A DNA stretch of 63,722 nt, the filler included, from Octopus bimaculoides (Eukaryota): assembly GCF_001194135.2 (NCBI RefSeq). It is 8 parts of 7 records of this genome, joined end to end, with 100 filler letters (N's around TTAATTAATTAA, not from the genome) between each part and the next. Parts side by side here need not be neighbours in the genome. Positions count along the whole stretch, not along the records: positions 51,903 to 58,523 come from NC_068998.1; 7 more parts are not named here. One strand, written 5' to 3'. Below are positions 52,013-57,752 of the stretch, in pieces. The translations under genes and the position numbers were made by a program. The notes beneath the pieces were generated by a model. That model saw only the letters and a list, made by a program, of their open reading frames with translations. It was not told where the DNA came from and ran no database searches. Position 1 is the stretch's first letter. Each line of letters begins with the position of its first letter.

Positions 52013-52034
52013 ATATGTATATATAGCCCTCTTA

Positions 52035-52430
52035 GACATGCCCACGGTCACTCGGACAGCCACTGTCACTAGCTATGCCGATGATACAAAATTATGACAG
52101 GCAATAAAAAACGAAGGTCACGTCGCAAGCTTACAGCGGGACCTGAATTCGATATACAAGTGGTCTGAAATAAACAACATGCAGTTTAATGCTGGAAAAT
52201 TTCAAGCACTGCACTATCAGCTCACAAATGCACTACTGCCTGCATATACAGGACCCGAAGGCACTACAATCCCAGAGTTACAGGTAGTGAAAGACTTGGG
52301 AATAAGTATGTGCAATGACACATCATTTTATATGCACATTACCAAGATGGCAGCAAAGTGCAAACAACTGGCCGGATGGATACTGATGTCCTTCAAGACA
52401 AGAGACAAAGAAACTATGTCGACCCTGTGT
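52035..52430 (+). mobile_element. CR1/L2-group LINE reverse transcriptase fragment
   Basis: VTSYADDTKL*..LQRDLNSIYKWSEINNMQFNAGKFQALHY..VKDLGI..HI..KCKQLAGWILMSFKTRD. Confidence 0.85.
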
Positions 52431-53064
52431 CGAAGGTGGTGCTCTAGAACGGACGCAGCAGGTAACTAAAACCAGAAAAGAATAAAAGTAAAAAACGACT
52501 GATTTGTGTTTATGTCCCTCCAGTATATGGTTTGAGCAGGCCCATTATCATACTTTAAGGCCTGGGTGTCCTTCAGAATATTCTGGGTGGGCACTAATTT
52601 GTAATAATGCTAAAGTGGAGTAAATCCAAGGGTGTACCATTGAATAGTGAGGGGGAAGTACCGTCCAATGCAGCCCCTTAGCAATGGGCACGGATCTGAG
52701 GTAGACGAGGTTGCTGCACGTTGAATGACCACGTTGAGGTTCTGCCTTGGCTCGTACTGATGGCTTATATAAATATTGACCTCTGTAACTAGTTTAACTT
52801 ATATAAGTTCGTGGTTGGAAATGAAGTTGAAGTATCCTGTTAAGTTCGCTAGAGATAATTATTGTCAGAAGAGTATCAGGAAAAAAAACAACAGAAATGG
52901 TTTGGTTCTGGTTTCTTTTTGCAATATAAGAATTTAATATATTGCAATTCGATAATTCTCATTCATCATTCTTGACAGAGAGAATTCGGTAGATTGGCAT
53001 ATAGGTGGTTGTGATAGCAGAGAAATAACAGTAAAAATATCTCAACACACACGCACGCACGCAC

Positions 53065-53099
<35 letters not shown>

Positions 53100-53999
53100 A
53101 AAACACACACATGATGTGAGTGCATATGCGTATGTACTTGTGTGCGCTTGTGTTTAACTTTACACGTATAATTGTCTGTGTGTATATAAAAGTGTGTATG
53201 TGTGTGTGTGTGTGTATACCTTCGCGGGTACTAACTAGACATGTGTATGAGCGCGCTCGCGCGTGTGTAGTCTAAATATAATGAACAATAAAAAAAACCC
53301 GCCAACATAGAAATGACAAGTTTTAATAAATACGATATTAGCTTAAGGCTTTAATAGAAAGAGTGGTAACGTTTCGGATACTAGTCATTCATCAGAAGAA
53401 CGAGAAAAGCTTAGTAATAAAGATGAACAGTCATTTAGAGAGAGTAGGAAAAACATACGAAGAGTTAGAAACCAGGTAAGAATGCTGTTATATGGCGGGG
53501 GAGATAAGAAAGGAGAAATGAGTTGGTGTATATAAGCAAGTGTAGGTGTGTATCTGTGCCTGCAAGCGGACATAAGAGGTGAGTGTTCGTGCTAATGTGG
53601 AATCTTTGTGTGTAAAATGCAAATGTGGGAGTACTATGGCGTGGATACACAAACATTCCCACACACACACACACACATAGGGAAAATAGTGAGAAAGTGT
53701 TGAAAATGCGCGAATTATACATACATACATACATACATACATACACACATACATATTTGAACGTAGAATACTTTATTTCTGTAACATACGAGATAAATAT
53801 TTCTATTATATATATATATATATATATATATATCGAAGAATATTGCATTTTATGGAAAAGTTTCATATAAAAAATCTTACTGAAAATGGAAAATCCCATT
53901 TTTGTAACCTGTTTACGCTGCTTCCTGCTTATCAAAGTATAACTTATGTTCTTTAATGCAATTTTTAGCTTTGCGGGATTAGAAGGGTNNNNNNNNNNT

Positions 54000-54592
54000 C
54001 ATGTTGGTATATGTCTGGGTCATCAGTTACGAGTTTAGCTTGATGTTGCAAGCCACGGACGACCCCTTTCTTCACACTTTATAGATGGTGAAAATCGAAG
54101 CTCAAGTATTGTCCAATGAATGTGCGCTTGTGATATATAGAAATTGTGAGCCTACACTCTGTTTGAGGTTATTAGCACATCCAAGAAAGCAAGCTTATTA
54201 TTCGTTTTTGTTTTGGTTGTAAAACGTGTCAAAGTTTTTATTGAATTCACATGGTCCAGAAGTACTTGAACTTCATGTTGGTGTCATCTACGAATTTCAG
54301 TCACATGATTGACTTAAATGGCTTTTTTCTCTAAAACCATTTCTTCAAAGTATTCCGTGTATATGGTTACTATCACTAGGGAGAATGGAGAGCTCATTAC
54401 TAAATCTGCCCCATCAATACAAATCAGACTCCATTTGGAAGTATAACACAATTTCAACATCTCTATCAGGTTAACTGGTTTGTTCTCCAACTGAAAGACT
54501 CGAATTGAGTTTACCTCTAACCACCGATAGCAACCTTATCTGCAGGAACTTGACGAATAGGCTTACCACATCCAAAGTTACCATCTTGTTAG
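54000..54592 (-). mobile_element. Decayed Penelope-like retroelement RT (second subfamily)
   Basis: MVTLDVVSLFVK, DGADLVMSSPFSLVIVTIYTEYFEE, LKFVDDT and KLAFLDVLIT match the PLE MGSPLSP..YME / RYVDD / L.FLDV series. Confidence 0.85.
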
Positions 54593-54704
54593 GTAGATAG
54601 GTAGGTAGGTAGGTAGGTAGGTAGGTAGGTAGGTAGGTAGGTAGGTAGGTAGATAGGTAGTTGGGTGGGTAGGTTTTGAGTGGGTGGGTAGGTGGATAAA
54701 TAAA

Positions 54705-54736
<32 letters not shown>

Positions 54737-54790
54737 TAGAGAGATAGATACATACATACATACATACATACATACATACATACATAGGAC
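54590..54790. repeat. (GGTA)n/(GATA)n/(CATA)n compound microsatellite at the end of the PLE RT fragment
   Basis: Direct reading. Confidence 0.95.
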
Positions 54791-56285
54791 AAGCTTCCTC
54801 GGAGTTTCTGTCTACCGGTTCTACCCAAGAGGCACTAGTCAAGACACCCTTCCCTGTGGGATCCAACGCAGTACAACGTCGTTGCGAAGCGAACTTCTTA
54901 ACTACATAACAATCTCTACGCAGATGTTGAAATTACATGTTAGAAAAAAGACCAAAAAAAAAAACTGACTAAAACAAGAACCGGAAGGTATTTTACTGAT
55001 TTAGTTTTTTTCACATATATATTATTTTGTTATATTTTATTTTATTTCAGTGGAAGGAACAAGTGAATCACAAGTAATGTAGAAGAAATTTATATTAGTT
55101 CTTTAGTGTCATGCACGATTAAAATATATTTGTTTTACTGTCAGTATTTGGCAGTCTTGCACAATTAGAATAGTTTGTTATTATGTTATTTGGCAGTTTT
55201 TATTCCACTTTACGTGCATATCTAACAATTTCGATATGGCAAACTGACAGGGAACTCAATCAAACAGACATATACACATGTGCATATGTATATATACACA
55301 CATATATGTATGTAATTACACATATACATATGTGCGTGTTTGCGTGTTTGCGCGTTTGCGTGCGTGCGTGTGCGCGTGTGTGTTTGTATTTGTAGGTTTG
55401 AGTTTACAAAGAGGAGGAAAGAATACTCGATACAAATGTAGAGTGTAATTATTTTTTCTTATGCTGTTTCTATTCATATTTCCCCTGTCGCTGATCACGT
55501 AACTGAATTCTGAAGCATAAAATACTATATTTATAACAAAAACAATAGAGGTGGGTAGTCAGTGAAATTTTAAAAAGTATAAAAGAAATACTTGTGTCTT
55601 TTACATGTTTCCGTCTTTGAACTGCGGCGATGCTGAAGCACTTAATCGGGGGGGAAAATGCTCTAGCCGCAGAGCCAATCGTAGAATCACTAAACTTGTA
55701 TGCATCGTGGATTTTAAATTATTTTAAATGTCCTTGATTGTAAAATTCCTGTATTCATCTGAAGAAAATGGGTTTTTTTATAATGATCTAATGTACTCAT
55801 TGATGAATATCAAAAAAATCGTTAGAAACGGCTGTAATGAATTGACACTTATCCATCAATTGTTATATATGTGTATATATATATGTACACACACACTCAC
55901 ACACACAAACACATATGTATGTATATACATATTCTTTTATTCTTATACATGTTTCAGCCCTAAGGCAGTGGCCATGCTGCAGCCGTTTACTCAACATATA
56001 GGAATTAAACATATTCTGTATGTCTTAAATGATCTCTGACGAGATTCGCCTTTCAAATAAATTTTAACTTCATTAATTAATTTTCTGAAGGTCTTGAATT
56101 GAAACAGCTGTAAGGGATGTTTGTCAATTTTTAAATCAATAAACAATAATTTATCAATTATCTCTCTATTTTCTTATCTTGTTATAATAAATAAACATAA
56201 ACCACGGTTTATATAGTTAAGGTAACTAACCAGTACTTTCATAGGATCTTGCTATTTCTCAATAAGATTNNNNNNNNNNTATATA

Positions 56286-56321
<36 letters not shown>

Positions 56322-56333
56322 TGTATGTATACA

Positions 56334-56365
<32 letters not shown>

Positions 56366-56628
56366 CACATATATGCATCCTGCATTTTGTTGATGTTTGA
56401 GTATGTGCATACATATATATATATGTATGTGTGTGTGTATGTGTAAGTATGTATGTATGCACATGTATATGTGTGTGTGTGAAAGCATGATGGAAGTTGA
56501 GGGTGGTTATTTTGTGTACCCTGTTATTTCCCACCCATAATCTAGTTCATATTGGGAGGGGGAGTTTTTTTTATTGTATTTATTTTGGGATGTGTTTTCT
56601 TTGTATTTTATGCAAACTTTACAAGTTT

Positions 56629-56709
56629 TCCCCGGCGGGTAACCGCTTCTTCAGACAAATCCAACTATACGGTTTGGATTTGTCTGAAGAAGTGGTTGCA
56701 CGCCATGGA
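56629..56709 (+). ncRNA. Pre-miRNA-like long hairpin (candidate)
   Basis: 56641-56664 pairs with 56674-56697 over 24 bp (one G:U) around a 9-nt loop. A further 12-position lower stem has 9 pairs. Confidence 0.45.
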
Positions 56710-57612
56710 TTTTAGCGTTGCTTCAGAGTGAATGGTTCTTGAATCCGACAGATGTTAATGTTTGTTTGTATGGATCAAGGTATTTCTTGTATGATTTTTT
56801 TCTGGAGATGGATCCTCTACGAAAGTTTTCCATCGAGAAATTACGACATTATTATTTCAATTTTCAATTTACAAGTTTTTCTGTATCGTTTTCCAAATTA
56901 TGATTATAAAGCATGACTTTATAAATGAAAAGTCAATTCGAAACACGTTTTGAAATTTAACAATATTCTTTCAAACTCTGTAAATGATTAACAAAAAATT
57001 TCACTTCTTCGTTCTGTTACTTCTTTATTTCTTTACTCTTGTAGTTTTCTTCATATAAATTGCTGTTTGTATGCAACCTACAATACTTTTTGCTTATTCG
57101 GTTGATTTTAGTTTACATTTATATACACTTTTGTATACGCAATCAGACATTTTCTATTTATGCGATTATTATCTTTACAAAGCTACAATCAATGCTTTTT
57201 TTTTTGTTTAATTTTTGCCTTCTTAATACTTTTTTTTTAATGTTTCACTATTTCATTGCTTAGACCTCGTTCGAGAATCGGAGACGTGAAATCCAGAATT
57301 ACGAAGTTTGAAGCTTCTAATTAATAAATACAAATATTTGACACTTTATTTTAAGTATCAACTACATTCTTTTCGCCTTCTTGATAACACTGAAGTTTTG
57401 CATTCAACTGCTTCGATGCAAACAAACACACACATGCACACACACACACACACATACACACACACGCACACGCACACGCACACACATACACACGGACACG
57501 CACACGCATATGTCTACATAACTATAATATATCGCTATAAATCTGCCAGCTTGTCTATCTTTCTATAAATCTATTTCTATGAGTATCTTTCTGTTCGTCT
57601 ATTTATCTATCT

Positions 57613-57651
<39 letters not shown>

Positions 57652-57752
57652 TGTGTGTGCGCGCGTGCGTGTGTGTTTTGAACAGATCCACACTTACCTA
57701 TAAGTATTCTCATAAATATTTACATACGTCGCATTAACAACACACTCATGTA

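What the first reader, a model, noticed from the sequence alone, without database searches (positions are those of the whole stretch)
56629..56709. 81-nt hairpin with microprocessor-like geometry: candidate novel microRNA
Seen: AACCGCTTCTTCAGACAAATCCAA (56641-64) pairs fully with TTGGATTTGTCTGAAGAAGTGGTT (56674-97), with a 9-nt loop and an imperfect 12-position GC-rich basal stem in AT-rich flanks. Two G:U pairs on + become C-A mismatches on -, favouring + as the folding strand. Known: ~22 bp upper plus ~11 bp lower stem is the Drosha substrate layout, and coleoid cephalopods have many lineage-specific miRNA families. I do not recognise the arm sequences as a conserved miRNA. Inference: a novel miRNA, or a recent inverted duplication producing endo-siRNA.
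Basis: partly seen in the sequence, partly recalled or inferred. Interest (0 to 1): 0.7.

Follow-up and report, generated by a model that had tools for sequence, protein, structure and literature searches.

The report
Young hairpin repeat, unproven microRNA
The 81-base hairpin is real and far stronger than chance, but nothing available here shows it makes a microRNA; it looks most like a recently formed inverted repeat sitting at the end of a small mobile-element insertion in repeat-rich non-coding DNA, which is ordinary.

Summary
Bases 56629-56709 fold into a very stable hairpin: + strand RNA -54.4 kcal/mol (z = -12), - strand -46.8 (z = -9.2). It has 26 contiguous pairs, two of them G:U, a 9-nt loop, and an imperfect GC-rich base.

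- No Rfam family reaches threshold. The best miRNA match scores no better than a plastid 3'UTR hairpin.
- Basal UG, apical UGU/GUG and a correctly placed CNNC are absent on both strands.
- The duplex has no mismatch or bulge (MFEI 1.33). From general knowledge, that is typical of young inverted repeats.
- The arm sequences and candidate seeds appear in no searched paper, nor in the stored, partly truncated, octopus miRNA supplements.

One new point: an exact 12-nt direct repeat, TTTACAAGTTTT, lies at 56618-29 and 56868-79. It brackets a 238-bp, GC-richer segment, and the hairpin is that segment's terminus (shuffle p about 0.004). This looks like a target-site duplication.

The setting is decayed retroelements and microsatellites. 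Copy number, small-RNA reads and conservation could not be tested, because no cephalopod genome or library is reachable. Published work reports no siRNA pathway in molluscs, which weakens the endo-siRNA alternative.

Verdict: an ordinary young inverted repeat, at best a proto-miRNA.

The parts
56629..56709 (.). 81-nt near-palindrome (the hairpin). It folds on either strand and is more stable on +.
56641..56664 (+). 5' arm, 24 nt, unique within the piece.
56665..56673 (+). Spacer/loop CTATACGGT, 9 nt. The MFE fold constricts it to 4 nt.
56674..56697 (+). 3' arm, 24 nt. It is the reverse complement of the 5' arm except at one position.
56629..56640 (+). 5' side of the imperfect GC-rich basal stem. 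It pairs with 56698-56709 through 8 Watson-Crick pairs, 1 G:U and 3 mismatches.
56698..56709 (+). 3' side of the basal stem.
56618..56629 (.). Left copy of the exact 12-nt direct repeat TTTACAAGTTTT, a candidate target-site duplication. It ends at the first base of the hairpin.
56868..56879 (.). Right copy of TTTACAAGTTTT, 250 bp downstream. It is preceded by two TTTCAAT units.
56630..56867 (.). Candidate inserted unit, 238 bp, with the hairpin at one terminus. G+C is 0.39 against 0.34 and 0.26 in the flanks. No tRNA-like head and no Rfam match.

Best explanation
The hairpin is an evolutionarily young DNA-level inverted repeat in repeat-rich non-coding DNA. It is not a demonstrated gene.

Most likely origin. 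It arrived as the terminal structure of a roughly 238-bp retroposed mobile-element copy (56630-56867), either a SINE-like unit or a 5'-truncated LINE tail. That copy integrated by target-primed reverse transcription and duplicated 12 bp of target (TTTACAAGTTTT). In such elements a terminal stem-loop is what the reverse transcriptase recognises.

What is shown:
- the hairpin itself;
- its uniqueness within the piece;
- the exact 12-nt direct repeats abutting it;
- the composition shift of the bracketed segment;
- the transposon- and microsatellite-rich setting.

What is inferred:
- that the repeats are a target-site duplication;
- that the element is a retroposon;
- that other copies exist.

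Consequence if a passing transcript reads through it. Either strand would fold into a 31-36-bp shRNA-like stem. Molluscs are reported to lack a dedicated siRNA pathway, so the only route to small RNAs would be Drosha/Dicer/miRNA-Argonaute. By base rates from other animals, only about one such hairpin in a hundred becomes a real miRNA.
For: - Target-site duplication. The exact 12-nt direct repeat at 56618-29 and 56868-79 is the only non-low-complexity 12-mer direct repeat within 600 bp in the whole piece. A repeat of at least 12 nt abutting the hairpin base within 2 nt, with its partner on the far side, arose in 0.38% of 5000 local shuffles.
- Repeat length. Twelve bp lies inside the variable 7-20 bp range of non-LTR insertions and outside the fixed lengths of most DNA transposons (general knowledge).
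- Target and tail. Read on the - strand the repeat starts with AAAA, as at TT/AAAA targets. Read on + the segment ends in two TTTCAAT units, a microsatellite-like tail.
- Composition. The segment has G+C 0.39 against 0.26-0.34 in the flanks.
- Youth. The repeats match 12/12 and the inner arms 23/24.
- Arm differences cluster in the base: 4 of 12 outer positions against 1 of 24 inner (p = 0.034). That fits a structure inherited with an imperfect base rather than uniform decay.
- Setting. There is a LINE reverse-transcriptase fragment with a YADD motif, further RT-like fragments on the - strand, SINE-like pieces (family D11) and many microsatellites.
- Against a canonical miRNA. No Rfam family reaches threshold: mir-1684 scores 41 bits against a cut-off of 60, and a plastid 3'UTR hairpin scores 41.8. 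No basal UG or apical UGU/GUG is present, and CNNC sits at +19 to +21 or is absent. MFEI is 1.33 with no mismatch or bulge in the 26-bp helix.
- Base rates. More than 6,000 suitable hairpins made by template switching in primates yielded 18 MirGeneDB miRNAs (PMC10710096).
Against: - No second copy could be examined, so 'mobile element' rests on one pair of direct repeats that I noticed post hoc.
- The unit has no tRNA-like head, no recognisable A/B boxes, no clear poly(A) tail and no match to any family.
- A 35-bp terminal stem is longer than the 3' stem-loops I know from LINE/SINE pairs.
- The flanks are T-rich, which favours chance T-run matches. TTTT also flanks the bare 80-bp palindrome.
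- An origin as a mobile element does not exclude later use as a miRNA. Made1 giving rise to mir-548 is the precedent (PMC1784062).
Confidence: 0.45

Rival explanations
1. In-situ birth by replication template switching. The polymerase copied about 24-28 nt from the opposite strand, creating or homogenising a perfect inverted repeat in one event. The 12-nt direct repeat is then a coincidence.
For: - The perfect inner arms (23/24) with a short spacer match the size and shape of template-switch products, which are inverted fragments of at least 15 nt and can make whole hairpins in one event (PMC10710096).
- The inner arms are cleaner than the outer ones (p = 0.034). That fits a recent event that homogenised an older imperfect repeat, as described for yeast promoters (PMC13100816 abstract).
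- The arms are unique within the piece.
- Another palindromic junction, (TGTA)n/(TACA)n, lies 270 bp upstream.
Against: - The direct repeat abutting the hairpin is unlikely by chance (p about 0.004).
- The basal stem pairs better than chance, so a single 24-nt event does not explain the whole palindrome.
Confidence: 0.25
2. A genuine lineage-specific miRNA gene, whatever its origin. A Pol II transcript is cropped by Drosha about 11 bp above the basal junction and diced into a roughly 22-nt duplex. Predicted products are UAACCGCUUCUUCAGACAAAUC (56640-61) and UUUGUCUGAAGAAGUGGUUGCA (56679-700), both with a 5' U.
For: - A stem of 31-36 bp with single-stranded flanks fits the preferred Drosha substrate length of about 35 bp (PMC10710096 introduction).
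- The predicted pre-miRNA is 61 nt and both arms start with U.
- With no siRNA pathway in molluscs, a transcribed hairpin has only this route (PMC12479628).
Against: - No family match.
- No UG or UGU/GUG motif, and CNNC is misplaced.
- The apical loop is 9 nt nominal and 4 nt in the fold, against a preference for 10 nt or more.
- A fully paired duplex is atypical of established animal miRNAs (general knowledge).
- Candidate seeds and arm sequences are absent from the stored supplements of the octopus miRNA study and from all searched papers. Two of the supplement files are truncated.
- The base rate is about 0.3-2% (PMC10710096).
- There is no evidence of transcription.
Confidence: 0.08
3. An 80-bp palindromic MITE of the Made1 type. 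Two roughly 36-nt terminal inverted repeats surround a 9-nt core, inserted with a short TTTT duplication.
For: [quoted passage not shown]
- TTTT lies on both sides, at 56626-29 and 56710-13.
Against: - TTTT is common in these T-rich flanks, so the match carries little weight.
- The termini are the least symmetrical part (8 of 12), whereas MITE ends are usually the best conserved part.
- It does not explain the 12-nt repeat.
Confidence: 0.1
4. An assembly artefact, that is, a chimeric fold-back created during library preparation or assembly.
For: A 10-N scaffold gap lies 350 bp upstream, at 56270-79.
Against: - The hairpin lies inside a contig of more than 2 kb, not at its edge.
- The arms differ at one base and the base of the stem is imperfect. 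A fold-back artefact would not produce that.
Confidence: 0.03

Closest known systems
Made1 MITEs and the hsa-mir-548 family derived from them (PMC1784062)
   Same: An 80-81-bp near-perfect palindrome with arms of about 36 nt and a short core, forming a very stable hairpin of pre-miRNA size. It illustrates that a transposon-borne palindrome can be both a repeat and a miRNA source.
   Different: - Made1 is a mariner derivative present in thousands of copies.
- Here copy number is unknown and the terminal symmetry is poor.
- The better-supported boundary is a 238-bp unit with a 12-bp duplication, not the 80-bp palindrome.
Hairpins generated by template-switch mutations, a few of which became primate miRNAs (PMC10710096)
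   Same: A perfect inverted fragment of at least 15 nt with a short loop in otherwise unstructured non-coding DNA, with a stem near 35 bp.
   Different: - Diagnosis needs an ancestral or outgroup sequence, which is not available here.
- The flanking 12-nt direct repeat is not a feature of template switching.
3'-terminal stem-loops of stringent-type LINEs and their partner SINEs (for example eel UnaL2/UnaSINE1; general knowledge)
   Same: A stem-loop at the very end of a retroposed unit flanked by a variable-length target-site duplication, with a possible short tandem-repeat tail.
   Different: - Known examples have stems of roughly 10 bp, not 35.
- No partner LINE and no other copies were identified.
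Canonical animal pri-miRNA (Drosha/DGCR8 substrate; MirGeneDB criteria)
   Same: Stem length, single-stranded flanks, and a predicted 61-nt precursor with 5'-U arms.
   Different: - Fully paired duplex and short apical loop.
- No UG, UGU or correctly placed CNNC motif.
- No reads, no conservation data and no family match.

Membership tests
Animal miRNA gene (MirGeneDB-type criteria) | Hairpin with at least 16 paired positions between the two arms | tested here: met
   26 contiguous pairs plus a 7-pair imperfect base
Animal miRNA gene (MirGeneDB-type criteria) | Stem of about 35 bp flanked by single-stranded RNA, with an unstructured apical loop of 10 nt or more | tested here: inconclusive
   The stem is 31-36 bp depending on context. 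The loop is 9 nt nominal and 4 nt in the MFE fold. The preference is quoted in PMC10710096.
Animal miRNA gene (MirGeneDB-type criteria) | Reads from both arms with uniform 5' ends and 2-nt 3' overhangs | not testable with these tools
   No small-RNA data are reachable.
Animal miRNA gene (MirGeneDB-type criteria) | Presence in a second species, the rule used for novel octopus families | not testable with these tools
   The rule is stated in PMC9699675. No cephalopod genome is reachable. Routes through ORFs failed. A positive control with the LINE RT fragment returned one hit only.
Animal miRNA gene (MirGeneDB-type criteria) | Auxiliary Drosha motifs: basal UG at -14, apical UGU/GUG, CNNC at +16 to +18 | tested here: not met
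   None is found on either strand for 5p starts at 56638-56646. CNNC lies at +19 to +21 on + for the best cuts and is absent on -. These motifs are helpful but not obligatory.
Any described miRNA or other RNA family (Rfam 15) | Covariance-model score at or above the family's gathering score | tested here: not met
   Best matches: mir-1684 at 41 bits (cut-off 60) and Plastid-psbJ-2 at 41.8 (cut-off 65.6). These are generic hairpin matches.
Annotated octopus miRNAs (Zolotarov et al. 2022) | Arm sequence or seed 8-mer listed for an Ovu miRNA | tested here: inconclusive
   Neither the arm fragments nor any of 12 candidate seed-site 8-mers are present in the stored supplements. Precursor sequences are not held and two files are truncated.
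hpRNA / endo-siRNA locus | A dedicated siRNA pathway (siDicer, siAgo) in the host and a long inverted repeat of hundreds of bp | tested here: not met
   The stem is only about 35 bp. The literature reports no siAgo, siDicer or endo-siRNA signal in molluscs, including O. bimaculoides (PMC12479628).
Non-LTR retroposon insertion (SINE or 5'-truncated LINE) | Flanking target-site duplication of variable length (about 7-20 bp) | tested here: met
   An exact 12-nt repeat brackets 238 bp and abuts the hairpin. Shuffle p = 0.0038.
Non-LTR retroposon insertion (SINE or 5'-truncated LINE) | A-rich or short tandem-repeat 3' tail | tested here: inconclusive
   On - the duplication begins with AAAA and there is no separate tail. 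On + the unit ends with two TTTCAAT units.
Non-LTR retroposon insertion (SINE or 5'-truncated LINE) | tRNA/5S/7SL-derived head with Pol III boxes (for a SINE) | tested here: not met
   ARAGORN finds none. There is no Rfam match in 56560-56900.
Non-LTR retroposon insertion (SINE or 5'-truncated LINE) | Multiple dispersed copies | not testable with these tools
   - No other copy in the 6.6-kb piece.
- 19-mer scans of the metagenome and viral collections gave only chance single matches.
Palindromic MITE (Made1-like) | Terminal inverted repeats, a family-specific target-site duplication, and many copies | tested here: inconclusive
   The whole element is palindromic. TTTT flanks both sides, but in T-rich DNA. 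Copy number is untestable.
Template-switch-generated hairpin | The ancestral sequence lacks the inverted copy, and one event explains at least 5 differences | not testable with these tools
   It needs orthologous or outgroup sequence. The criteria are in PMC10710096.

The most novel reading that the evidence does not exclude
The hairpin is a very young, genus- or species-specific miRNA caught close to its birth from a retroposon-terminal or template-switch palindrome. Molluscs appear to lack a siRNA pathway, so perfect transposon-borne hairpins could only feed the miRNA machinery. Loci like this one would then be the raw material of the large coleoid miRNA expansion.
Probability: 0.07. Interest if true: 0.45.

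Novelty: new member of a known kind. Interest (0 to 1): 0.15.

Why it matters
As it stands the finding matters little. Strong, near-perfect hairpins of this size are common by-products of transposon insertion and replication errors, and only about 1 in 100 becomes a real miRNA.

Its modest value is as a concrete, easily tested candidate. A single BLAST against the source genome and one mapping of existing octopus small-RNA libraries would settle it.

If it did yield a discrete miRNA duplex, it would be an example of how new miRNA genes arise from mobile-element hairpins in a lineage noted for miRNA expansion and reported to lack endo-siRNAs.

Tried and rejected
**Routes to cephalopod sequence**
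- I looked up five ORFs in and around the hairpin by exact product. None is on record.
- I searched for homologues of the 72-aa ORF that spans the hairpin and found none.
- As a positive control I searched with the LINE RT fragment, which should be highly repeated. It returned a single 552-bp ENA contig. The protein collection therefore hardly covers this organism's repeats, and the negative results say nothing about copy number. For that reason I did not spend the third homologue search or the representative search on the 61-aa ORF of the 238-bp unit.

**Collection scans**
- The 19-mer TTGGATTTGTCTGAAGAAG gave 24 metagenome and 2 viral stretches. Each has one match only, with unrelated flanks. 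A homologous hairpin would give two opposed matches. These are chance hits.

**Literature by sequence**
- 12 arm fragments in DNA and RNA letters gave 0 papers.
- Octopus miRNA supplements: no arm fragment and no candidate seed.
- The mollusc small-RNA survey has no stored supplement.

**Organism identity**
- I recalled an octopus SINE consensus that resembles 54783-54900 and 55597-55639 / 55941-55983. Text searches for it found nothing, so 'octopus' remains unverified by any tool.

**Readings rejected**
- Known RNA family.
- tRNA-derived SINE head.
- Local 250-bp tandem duplication: there is no similarity between 56630-56867 and the next 240 bp.
- Helitron end: there is no CTRR terminus, and a flanking direct repeat is present.
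- Coding sequence: the ORFs crossing the hairpin have no Pfam match.

Full report
**1. The observation**

- The 24-nt arms, 56641-64 and 56674-97, are reverse complements except at one position.
- The spacer is 9 nt.
- The 12 basal positions give 8 Watson-Crick pairs, one G:U and three mismatches.

Stability:

| Molecule | Energy (kcal/mol) | z-score |
|---|---|---|
| + strand RNA | -54.4 | -12.0 |
| - strand RNA | -46.8 | -9.2 |
| + strand DNA | -32.3 | -11.4 |

For the two RNA folds and the DNA fold, none of 200 dinucleotide-preserving shuffles folded as well.

The helix has 26 contiguous pairs, 56639-64 with 56674-99. Two of them are wobbles on + (U56640:G56698 and G56645:U56693).

Within the 6.6-kb piece this is the only inverted repeat of its class outside low-complexity DNA, and 30 shuffles gave none. 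The basal stem is also better paired than chance (p about 0.003-0.009).

Two qualifications apply.
- In a 201-nt context the three outermost pairs are replaced by a competing pairing, so the stem is 31-36 bp.
- The argument for the + strand from two G:U pairs is weak. Two transitions falling that way has p = 0.25. The - strand version, with two C-A mismatches, still folds very well.

**2. Surroundings**

The piece is typical repeat-rich non-coding animal DNA.
- It holds many microsatellites.
- A non-LTR reverse-transcriptase fragment with a YADD motif and an in-frame stop lies at about 52026-52439.
- Further RT-like fragments lie on the - strand at 54000-54600. They have no Pfam match.
- SINE-like pieces are present (family D11).
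- There are two 10-N scaffold gaps.
- There are no tRNA genes.
- ORFs crossing the hairpin have no Pfam match and no homologue.

Nothing indicates an exon or a promoter. I recognise some fragments as resembling an abundant octopus SINE. That is memory only, and text searches did not confirm it. The organism is therefore not established by any tool.

**3. A candidate insertion boundary**

An exact 12-nt direct repeat, TTTACAAGTTTT, lies at 56618-29 and 56868-79.
- It is the only non-low-complexity 12-mer direct repeat within 600 bp in the piece.
- Its left copy ends on the first base of the hairpin.
- With the hairpin fixed and the flanks shuffled locally, a repeat of at least 12 nt abutting the hairpin base (within 2 nt), with its partner across the hairpin, arose in 19 of 5000 trials (p = 0.0038).
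- The 238 bp between the copies are richer in G+C (0.39) than the flanks (0.34 and 0.26).

This is what a target-site duplication looks like. Twelve bp fits the variable duplications of non-LTR retroposition better than the fixed lengths of DNA transposons (general knowledge).

Orientation is ambiguous.
- On the - strand the repeat begins with AAAA, as at TT/AAAA targets, and the hairpin is the 3' terminus of the unit.
- On the + strand the unit ends in two TTTCAAT units, a microsatellite-like tail, and the hairpin is the 5' terminus.

The test is post hoc, and the unit has no tRNA-like head and no family match. I treat this as the leading reading, not a proven one.

**4. Is it a miRNA?**

Geometry fits.
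- A stem of 31-36 bp has single-stranded flanks.
- A cut 11 bp above the base would give a 61-nt precursor with 5'-U arms at 56640-61 and 56679-700.

Everything else testable is negative or neutral.
- No Rfam family reaches its threshold. mir-1684, a family I recall as chicken-only, scores 41 bits against a cut-off of 60. A plastid 3'UTR hairpin family scores the same, which shows these are generic hairpin matches.
- There is no basal UG and no apical UGU/GUG on either strand. CNNC lies at +19 to +21 rather than +16 to +18 on + and is missing on -.
- The apical loop is 9 nt nominal and 4 nt in the fold, against a stated preference for 10 nt or more (PMC10710096).
- The duplex has no mismatch or bulge and MFEI is 1.33. 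From general knowledge, that is characteristic of young inverted repeats rather than established animal miRNAs.
- Arm fragments and 12 candidate seed-site 8-mers are absent from all searched papers and from the stored supplements of the octopus miRNA study. Those supplements lack precursor sequences and are partly truncated.

Reads, strand, 5' homogeneity and conservation in a second species are the criteria that actually define a miRNA. Conservation in a second species was the criterion required for novel octopus families (PMC9699675). None of these could be tested.

**5. Why copy number could not be measured**

No cephalopod genome is reachable.
- Exact-product look-ups of five ORFs failed.
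- The homologue search of the hairpin-spanning ORF found nothing.
- The control with the LINE RT fragment returned a single short ENA contig. The collection does not cover this organism's repeats, so the negatives carry no information.
- A 19-mer scan of the metagenome and viral collections gave only single chance matches with unrelated flanks.

**6. Literature that sets the priors**
- Template switching created more than 6,000 suitable hairpins in primates, of which 18 are MirGeneDB miRNAs (PMC10710096).
- Made1 is an 80-bp palindromic MITE (2 x 37 bp + 6 bp) that gave rise to the mir-548 family (PMC1784062). A transposon origin and miRNA function are therefore not exclusive, but conversion is rare.
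- A survey of 32 molluscs found no siAgo or siDicer. Its read-pair assay, run on a subset that includes O. bimaculoides, found no endo-siRNA signal (PMC12479628). A transcribed hairpin here could only enter the miRNA pathway, like an shRNA.

**7. Verdict**

This is a real, young, near-perfect inverted repeat.

My estimates for its origin:

| Origin | Probability |
|---|---|
| Terminus of a small retroposed element | about 0.45 |
| Made in place by template switching | about 0.25 |
| Made1-like MITE | about 0.10 |
| Assembly artefact | about 0.03 |

Independently of origin, I put the chance that it is a bona fide miRNA gene at about 0.07-0.08.

It is an ordinary feature, a new instance of a known kind. 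Its interest is limited to being a cheap test case, and the decisive computations are listed separately.

Noticed in passing
window 56280-56372: Palindromic microsatellite junction, (TGTA)n switching to (TACA)n, which would fold into a hairpin of about 40 bp. It gives sub-threshold matches on both strands to repeat-derived miRNA families (mir-297 at 67 bits against a cut-off of 90, also mir-466, mir-1277 and others). It is a low-complexity artefact, not a gene.
   Followed up: partly
window 52026-52439 (+): Decayed non-LTR reverse-transcriptase fragment with a YADD motif and an in-frame stop. Pfam RVT_1 matches weakly (E = 0.0085, below the cut-off). The only relative in the 5.8-billion-protein collection is a 94-aa ORF on a 552-bp ENA metagenome contig (P0001, L027; 60% identity).
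   Followed up: partly
window 54000-54600 (-): Frame-shifted peptide fragments (MVTLDVVSLF..., ...LAFLDVLI...) that from memory resemble reverse-transcriptase motifs of retroelements. There is no Pfam match.
   Followed up: partly
window 54783-54900; 55597-55639 and 55941-55983: Pieces that from memory resemble an abundant octopus SINE carrying an internal microsatellite. The last two are 72% identical direct copies (family D11). A text search of the recalled consensus found no paper, so the organism remains unverified.
   Followed up: partly
window 57412-57526 and 57592-57682: CA-rich and TG-rich low-complexity blocks that form an 83-nt, 78% complementary inverted pair about 90 nt apart. This is another potential fold-back made of simple repeats.
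   Followed up: no
window 53989-53998 and 56270-56279: Two runs of exactly 10 N (scaffold gaps). The second is 350 bp upstream of the hairpin.
   Followed up: no
window 56608-56616 and 56710-56713: The hairpin is followed directly by TTTT, a Pol III terminator-like run, and preceded by TTTT. A near-octamer, ATGCAAAC, lies about 20 nt upstream. A short Pol III-type hairpin transcript is conceivable, but no TATA/PSE arrangement was seen.
   Followed up: no
window 56856-56879: Two TTTCAAT units lie immediately before the right copy of the 12-nt repeat (TTTCAAT TTTCAAT TTTACAAGTTTT). This could be a tandem-repeat 3' tail of the inserted unit or microhomology with the target.
   Followed up: partly
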